DNA of 58,064 nt, filler included, from Platydemus manokwari (GCA_037951405.1; 4 parts of 4 records of this genome joined end to end with filler, not necessarily neighbours in it); one strand, 5' to 3'. Positions 48,274 to 58,064 are shown, counted from the whole stretch's first letter. Translations and numbers: made by a program. The notes: a model not told the origin generated them from the letters alone.

Positions 48274-51200
48274 ATTGATCATCTAGATTCTAGATTAAAC
48301 AATCTAAAGAAAATTTCTTATTGAATTTCCACCACTTGAATTGAATTTAAATTCTTTAGTTTTATTTTTCAAATGAAAACTATTACAAGTTTTCAAATTA
48401 CTTCATTGTATTTTTTAAAATTAAAATTATAGATATTAATTTTATTAATTTTCTTAATTGTTTGAAAAAATAAATAAATTTAATATCCATGTATTTTATT
48501 AGATATTTTTATTTGATTAAATAATTATTTTTTCTACGAAGAATTTCTACAGTTTGGAATAGTTTTAAAATTTAATTAAACTGAACCCTTAACAAACTAG
48601 AAACTGTGACCAGAGTTTTAAAATTTAGATACTCTAATCACAATTTGATGATCATCAGTATAATTAATTAATTTTCAAACATCACTGTAAATATTGTTAA
48701 AAATATTAATTAAAAAATGCGATATTATAAAAATTATAAAAATTAAATAACCGGAATCATGCTTATCTCGATATCTATATTATAATGTATATAATTTTTC
48801 AATTTATTACATTTAAAATTATTCTGATCAATACTGAAGTTATGTAAACTTCTCAATAAATTTGTTTGAATACTTTTATAACAAAATTATATTCTTTCCG
48901 GACTTAATTTCGTGAAAAATATTACCACTGCTAACAATAATAATTGGTACGTAAAATACAGAATAACGTTTGTCATTAAAAATTATATATTTAAATATGA
49001 AAACTAAATAACAAATTCACTTTAAAAAAAGAACATTAATTTTTCAATGATTGCTTCTATTTTCTTTTTAGGTTTATGAGATTTTCAATTTTTCATTATA
49101 AATATTTTTCGTACCTTATTTTCTATAGATAAACAGCCAAAATAATATACCACGATCGAACCAACGACCTTAAAATAATCACTCAAAAGCTTCTTTCAAC
49201 TGATCTACCGAGTTCCACTTTTAATTTTAAAATATATAATATAATTTCATATATAAATTTTTAAATCCTCATCATTTCGAAATATCATTTGTCTTGCTGT
49301 ATTATTTTGAAATGTACATCTAATAATAAAAATGATTGCCGCTCTTATTTTTTATTTAGACATGATCAACATTCTTGTTAGTGTTTCTACGATTTGAATT
49401 TTATCACACAACCAAATAGAATTTTTTAATGTTTTAAGCATTTCGTAATTTTAGTTTTCTTTCTCATGATCTTATAAACCTTTGTTATTTTCATTTCTTT
49501 TTTTAGATTTTCAAATTTGCATAATCTCTATTCTTAAGTAAATAATCTCTTCAATCCTCTTGATTAACTACTTTGTTTTTCTTTTTGGTTATAAACCTGT
49601 ATCAGTTCTCTCATCAAGTATTTCGTTTTTGTGGAATCTTTAACATTTCCAGTTTCAAGTGTTTCTGGACCGAAACAAAAAATTATTTTAAAATGTCATA
49701 GAAAAGAAAAGTTGTATTTTTTATGGTCATTACTCCTTTAAAGCCAAAGAAAGAGAGCAATTATAATTTAATTCTGTTCTTATTATTATTAACATAAATA
49801 AGTGTTTGATTATATATTTGATCGTACAGAATTTTCCAGCATAAATAACCTCAATGCTATGCTCACTGTTACATGCTGCAGAATTTTTATTCAAAACATT
49901 AATCGACTGTTTTATTTCTGAAATTAATCAAATCGATTTTTAACTGTATCAGAATCAATTTTAATTGAAAAGAGGTGTTTGAATTTTTTATATATTTTAC
50001 ATAAACTTTATATGAGTTAATGGAAACAAATTTTAATTAAGAGTTTTAAATCATTCATATTTTTAATTTAAATTTATTTATCATCTATTCTGACATTTCA
50101 CAGCCTGTGTTCGGTAATTGATTTTGAAAAACTTAAAAAGTATTTTAGAATTATATTGAACCAAATTAGTTGTGATCATTTACGATTAAATGGTTTTGAT
50201 TTTAATGAAATAAATTACTGCATTTGACACCTATAAAGAAAAATCAACGCTAGTAATGTTTTTTACAGTTCAATGTCAAGGAATTAATTAAAATGCTTTT
50301 ATTGAATATTTTGCATTTGGAATTTAATAGATAAAATTATTAAATTATTTTTTATTATGGTTATAATGATCTGTTGATTGAACCTTAGGCGATATATATA
50401 TACGTGTTTTTTTGATTTAGAGTTCACGAACTGTTCCGAAAGTTGCTAAAGAATTTTCATGAGCTAATATAATTATCTACATAGATATAAGATATGTGGT
50501 GATATACAATAATGGTTATTTATTCATTTCTCGACATTAAACACAATAGCAGCATCTTATTTTGTTCATTTATTTATTTCAGTTTAGTTTGATTTGAAAA
50601 TTCTTTTCTAAATATCGACATTAATTTAAATTTTTCTAACACAATATATTTTCTAAGCATGCACACAAGCTTTAAAACACACTCGACTAATTGTATGTCC
50701 AAAATTGTATCTGATATGATGAAATAAAAACCATTAACTACTAAATTTGTTGACATTACTAACACAATCGGATCAATTTTATTATCGTTTTAACTGCGGA
50801 TAATGTTACAACTAATTTTCATCTACCAAATACCTAATAAATGTCAACATTTTATTGCCGAATGTAAATTGTTTTAACAAGTGTTTCATGGAGATATTTT
50901 AAAAATATTTTAAATATTGAAATGTGTTTAATATGAAGAATTCACTGTTTGACGACAGTGATAAAAATATTAAATTTAATCAAATGCCATATGAGACAAG
51001 TATTTGATGATATTTAGGTTTAATTTTTTAATTCATTTGAATCTTTATTATGAAAAAATAAATGCAGTGATATTGATGTCTCCATACTTTGAAATGAACA
51101 AAATCATTGTATACAAGGAACACATAATTCCAGATAAAGTGCACAGTAACCAAAAGCTCATCAAATATGACCTGGAAAAGTAAATGAAGGGAATTTAACA

Positions 51201-53819
51201 TCATATTAGGCAGGAGGAATTATAATCCTTCATCTTTATCAATAAGCTTTGCAAATGAATAGACATGTTTACCATGATAATTTTAAAGTTTACTTTTTTT
51301 ATCACTTTCTGTTAAGTACCAGTGAGAAAAATCAAAAGCTTTGCAAACAATTACTTAATAATATATGGTTTATTGCGAGGATTAATTATATAAATTATTT
51401 ATATGACGGTTATCTAACTCAGTTAAATGAAACATTAGCGAGGAACATTTGTGCATAAGTATATAAAAGTGAAATTATATATCTCCTTATTCCTACAAGG
51501 AACTATAAGTTGCTCTTTCACACACACACACATATAAAGTGAAGTCTAATGAAAGATATTGTGTGTAGCTTTTATATTTTATAATTATTCCTGTATATAA
51601 TTATAATTTCTGGGAGAAAGCCCGATGCTTTGAAATTTCTGTTTTCCTGTTTATATATGTTTTTATAAATAACCATGTAGAATTAAAATGTTGGATAATA
51701 TAAATAGAAAATATTAATAGGAAATTAAGTCGATAAAATTCGCTAAATAGAGACTTAATAACCAATTATAAAAAAATATAAATAAAATGTTGAAATCCCA
51801 TCAAAATAAATCAATTGACACACAATAAAGTCAGGAGTATATAAGCAATCTGTACAATTTTGAGTTATAGTCAGGAACATTTAATTCAAGTAGATAAGAA
51901 AAAGATAGATATCACTTTAAAAACAAAATGTCGAGAAAGCTAGGAGGAAGTATTGACCGAATTTGATACTATTTTATGATTACGATTTTCTCAATAAGCA
52001 AAAATAAGTTTTTATTAATTAACAATAATTTGTTTTTTCTCAATTTTCCTATCACGAATTTTAGCTGCATTTACATCCTTTGTCGTGTTCCTAGCCACAT
52101 AAGGGTTTCATAATTTAATAATAGAAATAATAAAAGTATTCTAATAATATTTGTGTTTACTTTGGAACATTTTAGTTGATACAGTTCCAATGTGCATATT
52201 TAATGCCCATATAATATTTAGCTTACTGTCGATGATTTCCTCTTGCTCAACATAATTTTTATTTCAAGATCACTGACAGACTTTCTGAAAATATTGGTAT
52301 TACATTTGGCTTTCGAATGTTGTATTAATTCATATAAATTCATGTATCAGCACCATGTTAGGCCTTTTTTAGATCAACGCTACAAGTTGATGATTCATAT
52401 TTAAGTCCGTGTACCATGTACTTCGGACCTCAATAACCAAGAAACCCTAATCTATTCGTTCCTAAGGGAACAGTGATTTCACAATCTGTGTAAAACCAAA
52501 CCAATAAATCTTATTATTTACCAGGAAGCTTTTAAAGTAATAGTTTTGTAGATCTTCATATTTATCTTTATGTTTAACTCCGTGGGGTTCCCTAGTATCA
52601 TTATCATATAATTCTTCCAAAGTGATTTTACAAACCTTCTATAAAAAGTTAACGACTACTAACTCACTATTAAATTATTAATGCGAAGTTGAAATGCTTT
52701 GATAACACAAAGTTATCGTAACTATAAAGTCATCGTTTAACTATTAGTTTCTCATATACACACTATTGGTACTGGAATTCTTGAATAAAGTATTTAAATG
52801 GCAATTTATCAATTAAACCATCATAAATTTACATTATTCAGTGTCGATGGTAGCAATAATGTGTCTGAGCAAACATTCAATCGTTTAGGGATTTTTTGAC
52901 CATTATTAAGAATTTTATCTTCACTTATTTCAATATTTTTTACTTTAATTTCTTCTTTAAAGTTTTGAAAATTAGTTTTATCAATATCGCTTGAATTGGT
53001 AGAGATACATTATTCATTTATATAATTTCGATTTATCAGTTTTTCTAAAAATTTCAACTTAAAAAGTCAAAATTAAATTTTTATATATTTTTCTCAAAAT
53101 GCCATTTTCAACCGGATTTTTATGAAATTAGAAATACAACAGATGGTCACTAATTTTAGATAGATATTTTATCGATACCAGAACAAAACAAACCCACATA
53201 CTTCCTATTTTTGTTGTGTTCGAAATATGTATTCTGTAATATTCAAAATAGTTTTCATTCGAAAAATTAGTATATAAATTACTGCGAATATTTATTTAAT
53301 ATTGCCCATGTAGATTCCAAAAATAGTATATTCAGATTCAGGGTTACTGAATTCTTCCTGTTCCACAGATTATGGTATAATTATGTACGAATAAAATAGA
53401 TTTTTGAAGTTGCAAATAGAAGGAGTTGCAAAGTCAATATAAAATTTCCGAGAACCATAGATATATTTAATAATAATATTTTATTTTATAAGTAGTTTAA
53501 ACATGAAATATGAAAACTGACAAAATTATAAATTTCATACTTCTAGCGATAACGATATTGCTCTAAATGAAAGTCATTTTTTAAATCTTAAAACTATACT
53601 CGGGACTATAGTGTTAGCATTAATTTTTCTCTCAGTCAATAATCTTGAATTCTGTTCCAATTAAGAAGATTTTATGAGCGATTTAAAAAAAAAATTATGG
53701 ATTTATAAGTCTAAGTATATTTCCAGGTACAACTTTTATATATAATGTGGTTTATCTTACTAAATTTCTTATAATTTAGCTTTCATTACAAAAATTTATA
53801 AATAAACTTAAATTTATAA

Positions 53820-54850
53820 TAGAAATAATGAAAAAAATCACATTTTATTTTATAAAATTACACTTTTGCCTACTTTTTTTTTACCGAGTTAAACTTTATT
53901 CCAGAGTTTTTGTTAACATAACCGAATTATTGTTTATTATTATTCTAGATACGCACCACAACCGGGGTTAGTTATTAAGCATTTTGTTTAATAATATCTT
54001 TTTGTTGTTATTTTTCGAATGAATGATAAAGTAAACGTGTAGAATTCCTATTAATATTTGACTTTTTAAAAATTACAATTTCTAATTAGTGTTTGCATAA
54101 AGTTTATTCTATAGATTTTGTTAACAAAACTGATCTATCGTTTATTATTCTTATAGATACGGACCACAACCGGGGTTAGTGATTAAGAATTTTGTTTAAT
54201 AATGCCATTTTGTTCTTTATTTTTTGAATGAATGAAGAAGTAAAGCCGTACAAATTCATATTATTATATTGAAAATATTAATATATTAATTTTAAAAATT
54301 ATATTTCCAACTAGCTTTTTTCTAGGTTAAAGTTTATTCCAAAAATATTTTGTTAACTGAGCCGATTTATCGTTAATTATTTGTCCAGTTATAGAGCCCA
54401 CCGGAGTTAGTTATTGAGAATTTCATTTAATAACATGTTTCGTTGTCAATTTTCGAATGAATGGAGATAGGAAATGGTACGGTTGATTGATAATTAATTA
54501 AAAATCCAAACTGATTTATTGAAAAATTAACATTTTATTATATAAAATTGCAATTTTAACTAGTTTCGAATCAAGCTAAAGTTAAATTTTTAAAAGTTTT
54601 TGTTAATAAAACAATTTCATCTTTTATAATTCTTATAGTTATGGACCACAACCAGGGTTAGTCATTGAGAATTTTGTTTAAAATTGTTTTTTTTTGCTGT
54701 TATTTTTCGGATGAATGAAGTTATGTGGCAAAAATTCATACTGAAAAATAATGAAAAAATAATATTTTATTTTTAAAAATTAAAAATCTAACTAGGTTTA
54801 CACAACAGTTAAGGTTTATTCTAAAGGTTTTCGTTACTGGGGCTAGTTTA
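53820..54850 (+). repeat. Tandem ~210-250 bp intron-exon repeat, about 4.3 units
   Basis: Recurring blocks aa(g)tttattc..a..ttttgttaac, tag[exon]gttagt.att(a/g)ag.attttgtttaa and ttttcgaatgaatg, with exon starts at 53949, 54157, 54389 and 54639. Confidence 0.85.
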
Positions 54851-55158
54851 AGGTAATAATTGAAAACCCCTAATATGATAAGCATCAATAGGATCTCAAG
54901 ACAATTAAAGGTCACGGCTTATAATAAGCACATGTATGCATGAGTAAAAAGGTTTAATATTTTATTATTATTTTGAAAATAAATTATTATTAATTGTTTT
55001 ATTAAATTTTCAATATTAAATTCTTTGTACAAAGTTTTATAATTTTTTAACCTTATCTTTTGAATTCAGTTAATATTTAATGCCTTTGTTATTGTATTTT
55101 AATCAAGAGTTAATTATTTACATTTTTCTTCTAGATATGGACCTCCACCACCAGGGGG
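53949..55158 (+). CDS. Micro-exon array (partial gene) encoding Gly/Tyr/Pro/Gln-rich repeats
   Basis: AG|exon|GTTAGT units at 53949-53966 (ATACGCACCACAACCGGG), 54157-54174 (ATACGGACCACAACCGGG), 54639-54656 (TTATGGACCACAACCAGG) and 55135-55158 (ATATGGACCTCCACCACCAGGGGG). Spliced in phase 2 they read (G)YAPQP-GYGPQP-GYGPQP-GYGPPPPGG. Confidence 0.8.
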
Positions 55159-57399
55159 GTTAGTTAATGGGTTTTTATGTAATGCTTTTGTTAGATTTTG
55201 TAAAATTAATGATGAAATTTACAAATAATCGAAAAATTCAAATTTTCGAAGACCATCAAATGCATTATTGAAACAATGGCTAACGTGATCCGCATTAATT
55301 ACCAGAAGATATTTATTATTGTGCAAATCATGACTATATTATTAATAATACTCAACTAAAATATGGAGTTTTAAAATTGTTTCAAATTTTAAATTAATAA
55401 CACAGAACAAAATATAATTTTAACAAGTTAAAATAATGTTTTTATCTTCCAGGCCTTTCATAAATTTGATTTTGATCATAAAACTCTCGATTAATCTTCC
55501 TTTATTTACTCACTCAATTTAGATTTTCCTACGAATTCCATTCAGGAAGATACAACTGTAAAAAACCCTATTATATTTCAAAGACGACCTGAAGAAATTT
55601 CCACCTGGTCGTGAAGAACATTTTTATCTGAAATAAATATTAATTTTTTTAGTTTTTTTTACAATATTAGGTATTATTATGTAACTGAGAATCTTAACTC
55701 TGTGATTTGAACTTATGAAATATCATGTTACATATTATAAAATAATTGATCGCACACAATTACACTCATAAGCATTCACGACATTATACGCGTCGGATGT
55801 CGGGATTTCGTCCTTGTGTGAATTTACAAAATCAACAAATATACAACTAACTGAGCTAAGCCTTCTTTTGTTTGATCTTATTGTATGAACAATTAACGAA
55901 ATCATAAAAATGATGAGCTTCTTTCGATTTCAGAAACCAGATTGTATGTTTCTATTATCCGGATCGTAATAGTTGAATGTACTGACCATAAATAATAATT
56001 TAATATATAAATAAAATAAATATAAAACAACAGAAGTAAGGCGTTTATTGATCATTCAAACGAGACTTATAAAAATAATGCAAGAGTAAATAATATGATA
56101 AAAAAAGAGTTGTGTGATGCTTATTTATACGTCTAATGGTTTCGACAAGTTTTGAAGAGAAGAATACAGTAAACCACTTAATTATTGGTGGCCTCGGTAA
56201 TAGCAAGTTAGCACAATTCAAGAATTGGAGAAAGAAAGTTCATTAATTAAGAAATAAGAAATTATATAAACGTTCTCTGATTCTTGTATTAGCGATAAAC
56301 ATCAACAGGGTGCAGTTTAATCCGTTAACGATTGTATTTATTCAATAAATGCTTTTCAAACATGTTTTTTCTTCATAAATACATATTGATTTTAAAATTT
56401 GTTGTCGATTTCTGTTAAAACGTGTTTTATTTGAGCTAATTATGTAAATGACTTCAGATTATTCTTTATGGTTGCTATTTCAATGTTTATTTTCTTTATT
56501 CCAAATTAATGGAACACCATTGTGGCTAATATGTGGTTAATTCTCTGAATTCTATATTGTTGTTTAATTAATCCTAATCATTTTTATATTATTTATAATG
56601 ACTATCAGGAATTTAAAATTTGGTGCTTAGATATAATGTTGAATGTTTGTCCGCATTATATGCTATTTCTCTTTTATTTTTATTTATAAGTTATTTTTCA
56701 AACGTACGAATGCTAAATATCATTGTTTTTCACAAATATTTACTGCCGATTCTTCTATACAAGTTTCGACTACCAACTTCTTTTTATCTAATATTCAGTT
56801 TAGTATTGACTTAATTAATTTTCACTTTTTCATCAACATCATAAATATTGATAACTTTAAACTGAATAATAATAATTATTGTCTTTGAATGTTTGGGATC
56901 TGAACATTCGACTTTCATATCTTCAAGATGACATCCAATTTCATTATGAAAAATTGATTTAACTATCGAAAAACAAGATAAATTATTAAAATATTATTTA
57001 TTATAAATGTTATAAATATTTACTGAAATATCAATTCATTTTTTTCTTGGAAATGTCAATGGTTTTCAAATTGTTTGTTTACAATGTAGTTTTGTCTGCA
57101 AAATAATCTAGTTAAAATACATTCTATTTGTACAATAAAGCACAATCTTTTCAGATTTACTTTTTTTAACTTTAAACTCGAAAATTTCAATAGGCGAGAA
57201 ATTTTGAAATTTATCAGGACTTTTATATATGGAATATTTAAATAATAATACAAATATATGTAAAATCATTAAATCCGCAGATAAACAATTTACCACTCCT
57301 ACTCTTAAGCTATTTATAAGATTTTTACTGAATGAAAAATGATTTTTCAACTGTGTGCTCTACCATATGGTGTAAATGATTTTCAATTTTATAACCATA

Positions 57400-57830
57400 A
57401 TATGTCTTCATAGGTTGGACATTAATAACCAAAAATGATTTTAGGGAGATCAAACAGAAAAAGTGAAATAATTGTGAAGCGATTGATGTTAAACATTGAT
57501 TTCAGAAATATTTCAGGGCGTTTTCAATCAACTCTACTTTTAATTTATCTGGTTTAACAAATAAAACTACTAATTTTCGAAATTCTTTGAAGGATAGATA
57601 TGATATTATATTTGACAAGGCTAAAAACAAATAACTGGTTGCTTGGGAAGTCTTGAAAAATTTATATTTGCTTGAACAAATTTAAGTTGATGGAAAATTA
57701 AAGCCAGAAAAATAGTGGATTTATATAATTTAGCTTCTAATTTGTTGAATAGATCATGGATATTTCAATAAACTTTTAATATAACGTGTGAAAGATGTTA
57801 GGTATCTAGAAGACACCTATGTATCTTGAA
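57400..57830 (+). mobile_element. P-element/THAP9-like transposase remnant
   Basis: Degenerate NFRNSLKDRYD, AWEVLKNLYLLEQ and RVKDV segments in the expected order, with stops. Confidence 0.4.
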
Positions 57831-58064
57831 GAGTAGTTAGGCGAGTTTTCTGGAACAGGCGCAGAAATATGAATAATTGAATAAACGTGAGGGGATTATA
57901 AAAAGAAAAAATGAAAATATTACATAAACAGAATACATTACTGGTGGTTATATCTGTACCTTCGAGACACAAAGAGCAACGGCTAATAAAGCATATGAAA
58001 TAATCGTAGTCGATACATCTAAACTCAATCCTAAACATGAAAATAAAATAGTCTAATTTTTTAT

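What the first reader, a model, noticed from the sequence alone, without database searches (positions are those of the whole stretch)
53949..55158. Tandem array of symmetric micro-exons encoding GY(G/A)PQP repeats: a micro-exon-gene-like module invisible to ORF calling
Seen in sequence: four GC-rich islands of 18, 18, 18 and 24 nt. Each has a pyrimidine tract plus TAG before it and the same GTTAGT donor after it, and three of them lie inside a duplicated ~210-250 bp AT-rich unit. All four lengths are multiples of 3 in the same phase (2-2). Among the three 18-nt copies, differences are synonymous (TAC/TAT, CCG/CCA, GGA/GGT at junctions) apart from one Ala/Gly change, while the flanks have diverged much more. 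Established knowledge: arrays of symmetric micro-exons that vary proteins by exon skipping define the schistosome MEG genes. GYP-rich low-complexity tails occur in annexin A7/A11, galectin-3, scramblase and penta-EF-hand proteins. Inference: this organism builds a tunable Gly-Tyr-Pro repeat domain with one repeat per exon, so repeat number could be set by combinatorial skipping. The flanking exons and host gene are not identifiable in this window.
Basis: partly seen in the sequence, partly recalled or inferred. Interest (0 to 1): 0.85.

Follow-up and report, generated by a model that had tools for sequence, protein, structure and literature searches.

The report
Tandem 18-base coding micro-exon array
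A short stretch of very AT-rich animal-like DNA holds four tiny (18-24 base) exon-like islands, copied in tandem together with their introns, that each appear to encode one Gly-Tyr-Gly-Pro-Gln-Pro repeat of an unidentified protein; the sequence evidence for real exons is good, but no transcript could be checked and the principle is already known from other genes.

Summary
There are four GC-rich islands at 53949-53966, 54157-54174, 54639-54656 (18 nt each) and 55135-55158 (24 nt). Each follows a pyrimidine tract plus TAG and is followed by GTTAGT. All read (G)Y(G/A)PQP(G) or YGPPPPG in one phase (2-2).

- a fifth, decayed copy (54389-54405, 17 nt, frame-breaking) with intact splice signals;
- a truncated further unit at about 54810-54846.

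Three intact islands plus the decayed one sit in a 208/231/251-bp tandem repeat of exon plus intron.

Among the four intact copies, codon positions 1+2 vary at 2/12 sites against 80/133 in the flanks (p=0.005). Third positions vary at 4/6, which is the flank rate. This is a protein-level selection signature, from a small sample.

Inside the array the flanks are nearly as conserved as the exons, so "flanks diverged much more" holds clearly only for the outlying 24-nt exon.

No RNA data were reachable. Splicing, exon skipping and the host gene remain untested.

Closest precedents are the seven avian fast troponin-T P exons (one pentapeptide repeat each), schistosome micro-exon genes, and spidroin exon-intron repeats.

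Verdict: probably genuine duplicated coding micro-exons (about 0.65), a new member of a known kind. Combinatorial skipping is unsupported.

The parts
53949..53966 (+). Micro-exon E1, 18 nt, phase 2-2, reads (G)YAPQP(G)
   Evidence: TAG acceptor at 53946-53948 and GTTAGT donor at 53967-53972
54157..54174 (+). Micro-exon E2, 18 nt, phase 2-2, reads (G)YGPQP(G)
   Evidence: TAG acceptor and GTTAGT donor at 54175. Differs from E1 at one site, GCA/GGA
54389..54405 (+). Decayed copy (unit 3): 17 nt, reads YRAHR and shifts the frame. Either a pseudo-exon or a frame-breaking exon
   Evidence: CAG acceptor and GTTAGT donor at 54406 are kept. There is a 1-nt deletion and three extra changes at codon positions 1+2
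54639..54656 (+). Micro-exon E4, 18 nt, phase 2-2, reads (G)YGPQP(G)
   Evidence: TAG acceptor and GTTAGT donor at 54657. Its three differences from E2 are all synonymous third positions
55135..55158 (+). Micro-exon E5, 24 nt, phase 2-2, reads (G)YGPPPPG(G). Lies outside the tandem array
   Evidence: TAG acceptor and GTTAGT donor at 55159. It carries an in-frame 6-nt insertion. Exon identity to the others is about 80% against flanks of about 58%
53800..54846 (+). Tandem array of the exon-plus-intron unit: four units with start-to-start spacing 208, 231 and 251 bp, plus a truncated fifth unit from about 54810 that has no island
   Evidence: the repeat finder families D1-D11 and alignment A1. 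The unit motifs occur nowhere else in the piece
53909..53917 (+). Branch-point-like TTTGTTAAC, 32-40 nt upstream of the acceptor. Repeated at 54117-54125 and 54349-54357, and at 54599-54607 as TTTGTTAAT
   Evidence: The fit to the YTRAY branch consensus comes from established knowledge and was not tested
54012..54028 (+). Conserved downstream intronic block TTTTCGAATGAATGAAG, about 45-60 nt after the donor. Repeated at 54221-54237, 54450-54466 and 54704-54720. The first ~35 nt after each donor are also about 80% conserved
   Evidence: A role as a splicing enhancer is inference only
55453..55522 (+). Speculative terminal exon. It is the first good acceptor after E5. In phase 2 it gives Gly plus 22 mostly hydrophobic residues and then TAG. 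AATAAA lies at 55632-55637
   Evidence: An open stretch of this length is expected by chance about 1 time in 7 in this AT-rich DNA, so this is weak

Best explanation
These are genuine internal coding micro-exons of an unidentified + strand gene in an AT-rich, intron-rich eukaryote.

Each 18-nt exon encodes one hexapeptide repeat, (G)Y(G/A)PQP. The glycine codon is split across the junction (phase 2-2). The 24-nt exon encodes YGPPPPG. Spliced in series they would give a Gly/Tyr/Pro/Gln-rich, probably disordered, low-complexity segment.

The array grew by unequal crossing-over or tandem duplication of a ~210-250 bp unit made of the exon plus its whole intron. Every unit is symmetric, so gain or loss of a unit keeps the reading frame. 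Units are born and die: one has decayed to a frame-breaking 17 nt and another is truncated.

Shown here: the anatomy, the duplication, and the codon-position pattern of substitutions. Inferred: that the islands are spliced at these junctions, and what kind of protein region they make. Not determined: constitutive or alternative inclusion, and the host gene.
For: - Exact AG/GT boundaries, pyrimidine tracts and an invariant GTTAGT donor in all copies.
- Branch-like TTGTTAAC at a fixed 32-40 nt upstream.
- These are the only exon-like candidates in 9.8 kb: 4 on +, 0 on -, against 0.017 expected in simulations.
- Islands are 50-62% GC in a 24.7% GC background.
- Lengths are 18, 18, 18 and 24. The only indel among intact copies is 6 nt.
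- The six variable sites are four third-codon positions, all synonymous in the GY(G/A)PQP frame, plus two second positions. In the other two frames most or all changes would be replacements.
- Codon positions 1+2 vary at 2/12 sites against 80/133 flank columns (Fisher p=0.005). Position 3 varies at 4/6, which is the flank rate.
- The outlying E5 keeps its exon and splice sites while its flanks have fallen to about 58% identity.
- The decayed unit 3 shows what loss of constraint looks like. Its flanks are at similar distances from units 1 and 2 as unit 4's flanks are.
Against: - No transcript evidence at all.
- No flanking conventional exon, start codon or recognisable protein domain lies in the piece.
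- All copies descend from one ancestor. The splice-like boundaries therefore count as one observation plus its maintenance.
- The selection test rests on 18 aligned sites.
- Inside the array the introns are almost as conserved as the exons. Youth of the duplication could explain much of the intactness.
- The frame-breaking unit 3 also keeps perfect splice signals. Signal retention alone therefore does not prove function.
Confidence: 0.65

Rival explanations
1. Relic or non-functional repeat. The unit once contained, or by chance resembles, an exon, but the array is now untranscribed or unspliced DNA: pseudo-exons of a dead gene, or an intronic or intergenic tandem repeat. The intact copies are intact only because the duplications are young.
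For: - Intron flanks inside the array are 69-83% identical against 78-94% for the exons, a modest difference. Whole exon against flank is p=0.13 for the three 18-mers.
- One unit is already decayed and one is truncated.
- No host gene, ORF or domain lies in 9.8 kb.
- No RNA support exists.
Against: - Substitutions among intact copies avoid codon positions 1+2 (2/12 against 60% in the flanks, p=0.005), while position 3 evolves at the flank rate.
- The only indel in intact copies is in frame.
- E5 keeps its exon and signals despite flanks near background identity.
- GC-rich islands should erode in a 25% GC genome if they were neutral.
Confidence: 0.25
2. The reader's reading, which is a special case of the best explanation. 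The exons are real and are combinatorially skipped. Repeat number in the protein is tuned at the RNA level as in schistosome micro-exon genes, and the host is a MEG-like gene made mostly of micro-exons.
For: - All intact exons are symmetric and in the same phase, so any subset keeps the frame.
- There is a predicted run of four consecutive micro-exons under 70 nt and divisible by three. This matches part of the operational MEG definition in PMC7653826.
- The first ~35 nt after each donor and a block about 50 nt downstream are well conserved, as is often seen near regulated micro-exons.
- The avian troponin-T P exons are a precedent for regulated inclusion of repeat micro-exons.
Against: - Nothing here bears on splicing choice. 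Symmetry is equally expected for constitutive repeat exons such as those of collagen or PEVK.
- MEG products carry signal peptides, and most of the coding region is micro-exons (PMC4350168). Neither can be seen here.
- MEG micro-exons are, from my own knowledge and not checked in the papers read, generally not tandem copies of one peptide.
- The intronic conservation can be explained by recent duplication.
Confidence: 0.2
3. The feature belongs to the other strand or to a mobile element or satellite. The AG/GT boundaries are then incidental.
For: GTTAGT reverse-complemented is ACTAAC, a branch-site-like word. The unit is AT-rich repeat DNA.
Against: - On the - strand the islands are bounded by AC and CT, not by splice sites, and no exon-like candidate is found there.
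- The copies are strictly head-to-tail and local, with no dispersed copies in the piece.
- No Rfam family or tRNA is present.
Confidence: 0.05

Closest known systems
P exons of the avian fast skeletal troponin T gene (Tx segment)
   Same: This is a run of adjacent micro-exons produced by intragenic duplication. Each encodes one copy of a short peptide repeat: seven P exons give seven tandem AHH[A/E]E pentapeptides. They lie in a variable, non-globular region and are spliced in as a regulated block (PMC11016001; PMC7581897).
   Different: The peptide is different (His/Glu-rich against Gly/Tyr/Pro/Gln-rich), as are the exon length and the organism type. In troponin T the host gene, the inclusion pattern and the protein product are established experimentally. 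Here none of these is known.
Schistosome and tapeworm micro-exon genes (MEGs)
   Same: They have very small symmetric exons, with lengths divisible by three, in consecutive runs. They are invisible to ORF callers and hard for gene finders. Symmetry permits frame-preserving exon skipping (PMC7653826; PMC4350168).
   Different: MEGs are defined at the whole-gene level: at least 7 exons, micro-exons at least half of them, and a signal peptide. They are reported as restricted to flatworms. From my own knowledge, not checked in the papers read, their micro-exons encode different short peptides rather than tandem copies of one repeat with homologous introns. The gene-level features and the taxon cannot be assessed here.
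Repetitive exon-intron units of flagelliform and Argiope MaSp2 spidroin genes
   Same: Introns delineate the repetitive coding units. Exon and intron are duplicated or homogenised together. The repeats are dominated by G, P, Q, A and Y codons, and YGP(G) motifs are common (PMC9779670).
   Different: Spidroin exons are hundreds of bases long and hold many motif copies, and their introns are strongly homogenised. Here each exon is a single hexapeptide and the units have diverged 17-30%.
Collagen 54/45-bp exons and titin PEVK exons (from my own knowledge, not tested here)
   Same: These are repeat proteins built from many short symmetric exons that arose by tandem exon duplication. Repeat number changes by exon gain or loss and, for PEVK, by alternative splicing.
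   Different: Those exons are 45-90 nt and hold several repeat periods. The motif and phase conventions are different.
G/Y/P/Q-rich low-complexity tails (annexin A7/A11, penta-EF-hand proteins, scramblases, GRINA/TMBIM, the synaptophysin tail, the cephalopod rhodopsin tail; from my own knowledge)
   Same: The composition and short-period repeat of the predicted peptide resemble these XYPPX-like tails.
   Different: As far as I know, these tails are not encoded one repeat per micro-exon. No annexin, EF-hand or other domain exon is present in the piece, so no link is shown.

Membership tests
Micro-exon gene (MEG), operational definition of PMC7653826 | Exons shorter than 70 nt with length divisible by three | tested here: met
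   18, 18, 18 and 24 nt between AG and GT. These are predicted from DNA only.
Micro-exon gene (MEG), operational definition of PMC7653826 | [quoted passage not shown] | tested here: inconclusive
   There are four predicted exons in a row only if the 17-nt decayed unit is skipped. No transcript confirms their use.
Micro-exon gene (MEG), operational definition of PMC7653826 | [quoted passage not shown] | not testable with these tools
   No flanking exons are identifiable in the 9.8-kb piece. The contig could not be extended.
Micro-exon gene (MEG), as described in PMC4350168 | The product has a signal peptide or is secreted, and the gene is found in platyhelminths | not testable with these tools
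   No 5' exon was found and the organism is coded or unknown. CpG observed/expected of 0.97 and GC of 24.7% do not identify a taxon.
Micro-exon gene (MEG) | Protein variants generated by differential splicing of the micro-exons | not testable with these tools
One-repeat-per-micro-exon tandem arrays (type example: avian fast TnT P exons) | Adjacent micro-exons of equal phase, each encoding one copy of a short peptide repeat | tested here: met
   YAPQP, YGPQP, YGPQP and YGPPPPG, all phase 2-2.
One-repeat-per-micro-exon tandem arrays (type example: avian fast TnT P exons) | The exons are paralogues made by tandem duplication together with their introns | tested here: met
   Units with 208/231/251-bp spacing are alignable over their whole length.
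One-repeat-per-micro-exon tandem arrays (type example: avian fast TnT P exons) | Purifying selection on the encoded peptide | tested here: met
   Codon positions 1+2 vary at 2/12 sites against 80/133 in the flanks, p=0.005. Position 3 varies at 4/6. The sample is small and the copies are non-independent.
One-repeat-per-micro-exon tandem arrays (type example: avian fast TnT P exons) | The exons are actually spliced into mRNA, with regulated inclusion | not testable with these tools
Troponin T P exons themselves | An AHH[A/E]E-type His/Glu repeat within a troponin T gene | tested here: not met
   The peptide is GY(G/A)PQP. This is an analogue, not a member.
Annexin A7/A11, penta-EF-hand or scramblase type GYP-rich tail | The repeat region is joined to an annexin, EF-hand or scramblase core domain | not testable with these tools
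No such domain appears in any open stretch of the piece.

The most novel reading that the evidence does not exclude
The locus is a length-tunable low-complexity module. Tandem symmetric 18-nt exons, each one GYGPQP repeat, are included in varying combinations, so that the length of a disordered Gly/Tyr/Pro/Gln segment is set at the RNA level. The 17-nt unit, which keeps perfect splice signals, would act as a frame-breaking 'poison' exon that switches the product off. This would be a MEG-like diversification mechanism outside the secreted flatworm gene families, and it would evolve by unequal crossing-over of exon-intron units.
Probability: 0.15. Interest if true: 0.65.

Novelty: new member of a known kind. 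Interest (0 to 1): 0.45.

Why it matters
If the exons are expressed, this is an unusually clean example of a peptide repeat built one repeat per 18-nt exon. It preserves the whole birth-and-death series in 1.3 kb: young duplicates, an older diverged copy, a decayed frame-breaking copy and a truncated unit.

Such arrays are missed by ORF callers and by most gene finders and read aligners, so repeat domains of this kind are probably under-annotated in AT-rich genomes.

It would also be a convenient natural system for two questions. One is how very short exons are recognised, given the conserved donor-proximal and branch-site blocks. The other is whether the length of low-complexity regions is tuned by splicing.

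If the exons are not expressed, the locus is simply a decaying tandem repeat and of little interest.

Tried and rejected
From then on, no letters of 54751-54794 were sent to any search tool. Rfam and tRNA scans were run beside them. Local scripts and the earlier alignment A1 still contained them.

3. Related loci. One metagenome scan with a degenerate acceptor-exon-donor pattern gave a single GC-rich bacterial contig, L001, which is a chance match.

4. Extending the contig or naming the organism. Two exact look-ups with the look-up of encoding contigs and ten with the listing of cluster members found none of the piece's ORFs on record.

5. Neighbouring genes. No open stretch of 45 aa or more has a credible Pfam hit. 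The most protein-like stretch (52465-52638, - strand) gave only two weak hits in 1.84 billion proteins. Both were inflated by repeats in the targets: a DX-module repeat protein and a TPR protein. I rejected both.

6. Upstream and downstream exons. No phase-compatible first exon or internal exon was found. A 17-nt AG...GTTAGT segment at 49360-49376 does not fit the phase. A possible terminal exon at 55453 is no better than a 1-in-7 chance.

7. Literature. No paper in the library holds GYGPQP-type strings. Searches for 18-nt exon arrays gave nothing relevant.

8. Inverted repeats. The TTTTGTTAACAAAA palindrome upstream of E2 could pair with its copies in neighbouring introns. It is a perfect palindrome only in unit 2 and is AU-rich, so I did not pursue it.

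9. Minus-strand reading. Rejected, because there are no splice boundaries there.

Full report
**Observation**

The piece (48274-58064) is 24.7% GC with no CpG depletion: observed/expected is 0.97.
- 53949-53966, 18 nt
- 54157-54174, 18 nt
- 54639-54656, 18 nt
- 55135-55158, 24 nt

Each follows a pyrimidine-rich tract ending in TAG and is followed by GTTAGT. Five of the eight highest 18-nt GC peaks of the whole piece are these islands or their decayed copy.

I ran a mechanical scan for pyrimidine tract + AG + segment of 40% GC or more + good donor. On both strands it returns essentially only these four. When restricted to symmetric lengths and 50% GC or more, it gives 4 on the + strand and 0 on the - strand. 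In 1000 first-order Markov simulations of the piece the mean is 0.017 and the maximum is 1.

A separate scan asked for AG...GT segments whose translation uses only G, Y, P, Q, A, S and N. It finds the same four, and only in the frame with one leading base. The products are YAPQP, YGPQP, YGPQP and YGPPPPG, with a Gly codon split over each junction.

The repeat has more units than three. The repeat finder gives families with start-to-start spacing of 208, 231 and 251 bp, and a five-way alignment shows homology across the whole unit.

The third unit carries an island that has decayed to 17 nt (54389-54405). It has a 1-nt deletion and several replacement changes, and it reads YRAHR and then shifts the frame. 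It still has a CAG acceptor and a perfect GTTAGT donor.

A further unit begins at about 54810, with the upstream intron motifs, but breaks off without an island (family D8). The unit motifs occur nowhere else in the piece. TRF does not report the array.

**Is it coding?**

All copies descend from one ancestor, so the shared boundaries are one observation plus its maintenance. The informative question is how the copies have diverged.

Among the four intact copies, six of the 18 aligned sites vary. Positions 1, 4, 10 and 16 are third codon positions in the GY(G/A)PQP frame, and all four changes are synonymous. Positions 6 and 12 are second positions, giving Ala/Gly and Gln/Pro. In the other two frames most or all of these changes would be replacements. 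The only indel is 6 nt.

I compared this with unambiguously aligned flank columns, leaving out the YAG and the donor hexamer:

| Sites | Variable | Comparison with flank |
|---|---|---|
| Flank columns | 80/133 | reference |
| Codon positions 1+2 | 2/12 | Fisher p=0.005 |
| Codon position 3 | 4/6 | same rate as flank |
| Positions 1+2 with decayed unit added | 5/12 | no longer distinguishable |

This is the pattern expected of purifying selection on the peptide in four units and loss of constraint in the fifth.

Caveats: the sample is tiny, the copies are not independent, and AT-rich flanks are hard to align.

That needs qualifying.
- Inside the array, exon identity is 78-94% against 69-83% for the proximal flanks. 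Whole exon against flank is not significant for the three 18-mers (p=0.13).
- Only the outlying 24-nt exon shows a clear contrast: about 80% in the exon, 100% in the donor, and about 58% in the flanks.

**Splicing signals**

All five units keep YAG and GTTAGT. A branch-point-like TTTGTTAAC (TTTGTTAAT in unit 4) sits at a fixed 32-40 nt upstream of each acceptor in the array. Its fit to the YTRAY consensus comes from established knowledge, not from a test.

The first ~35 nt after the donor are about 80% conserved. A block TTTTCGAATGAATGAAG about 45-60 nt downstream is kept in all four array units. These could be intronic elements that help recognition of such short exons, or they could simply reflect recent duplication. 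I cannot tell which.

Predicted introns are 190, 464 (214 + 233 if unit 3 were used) and 478 nt.

**Host gene**

The host gene is not identifiable.
- No open stretch in the piece has a credible Pfam match.
- No phase-compatible upstream exon is found, and no other exon-like candidate.
- The first good acceptor after E5 (55453) would add Gly plus 22 mostly hydrophobic residues and a stop, with AATAAA 110 nt further on. An open stretch of that length is expected about one time in seven here, so this is only a lead.
- Rfam and tRNA scans are empty.
- The most protein-like ORF (52465-52638, - strand) gave only repeat-inflated chance hits.

**Transcript evidence and outside sequence**

None could be obtained.
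- The only public run holding the locus is DNA.
- A metagenome pattern scan gave one chance bacterial match.
- Exact-protein look-ups meant to extend the contig found nothing.
- Single exons (5-7 residues) are too short for any protein search.

**Mechanism, best reading (confidence about 0.65)**

These are real internal coding micro-exons of a + strand gene. Each contributes one Gly-Tyr-(Gly/Ala)-Pro-Gln-Pro repeat to a low-complexity, probably disordered segment.

The array expanded by unequal crossing-over of a ~210-250 bp exon-plus-intron unit. Symmetry (phase 2-2) makes every gain or loss frame-neutral. Units are born and die.

- Shown: the anatomy, the duplication, the codon-position bias and the in-frame indel.
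- Inferred: the splicing itself and the nature of the protein segment.
- Unknown: constitutive or alternative inclusion.

The main rival (about 0.25) is a relic or unexpressed repeat whose intact copies are merely young. I put it at about 0.2 overall, and nothing here tests it.

**Comparison with what is known**

- The closest functional precedent found is the avian fast troponin T gene. Its seven P exons each encode one AHH[A/E]E pentapeptide of the Tx segment and are spliced in as a regulated block (PMC11016001; PMC7581897).
- Schistosome and cestode MEGs share the small symmetric exons. However, they are defined at gene level: at least 7 exons, micro-exons at least half of them, runs of four or more (PMC7653826), and a signal peptide, with a reported restriction to flatworms (PMC4350168). 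Only the exon-size criterion, and arguably the run criterion, can be checked here.
- Repetitive exon-intron units in which introns delineate G/P/Q/Y-rich repeats, and are duplicated with them, are known from flagelliform and MaSp2 spidroins (PMC9779670).
- Collagen and titin PEVK exons are further analogues, from my own knowledge.

The locus is therefore best filed as a new member of a known kind: tandemly duplicated symmetric micro-exons, one peptide repeat per exon. It is not a new category, and it is not a demonstrated MEG.

**Verdict**

Interest is moderate (0.45): the sequence-level case is neat and worth a transcript check, but splicing, the host gene and any skipping are untested, and the principle has clear precedents.

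Noticed in passing
window 54389-54411: The decayed 17-nt unit keeps a CAG acceptor and a perfect GTTAGT donor although its coding content is destroyed. If it is spliced in, it would shift the frame. It could be a recently dead exon or a frame-breaking 'poison' exon.
   Followed up: partly
window 55453-55637: The first strong acceptor after the last micro-exon opens a phase-compatible 22-residue hydrophobic tail (PFINLILIIKLSINLPLFTHSI) ending in TAG at 55520-55522. AATAAA lies at 55632. This is a possible terminal exon, but it is near chance level.
   Followed up: partly
window 49360-49382: A further pyrimidine tract + TAG + 17 nt + GTTAGT segment lies 4.6 kb upstream. It has the same unusual donor hexamer, is AT-rich, and is not phase-compatible with the array.
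   Followed up: partly
window 54116-54129 (also 53908-53921, 54598-54611): The branch-site-like motif is embedded in a 14-nt palindrome, TTTTGTTAACAAAA, which is perfect only in unit 2. Copies in successive introns are mutually complementary and could in principle pair and loop out an exon. The pairing would be weak and AU-rich.
   Followed up: no
window 54012-54028, 54221-54237, 54450-54466, 54704-54720: A conserved intronic block with tandem GAATG words lies about 50 nt downstream of each array donor. It is absent downstream of the outlying 24-nt exon. It could be a splicing enhancer or just shared ancestry.
   Followed up: no
window 51519-51534: A short (CA)n microsatellite.
   Followed up: no
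window 52465-52638 (- strand): This is the most protein-like open stretch of the piece (58 aa, about 30% GC). It has only repeat-inflated weak hits in 1.84 billion proteins and is probably not coding.
   Followed up: yes
They are AT-rich low-complexity intron sequence. No search was made with them afterwards.
   Followed up: no
L001 401-426: The only metagenome match to the degenerate acceptor-exon-donor pattern lies in a GC-rich bacterial contig. It is a chance hit.
   Followed up: yes
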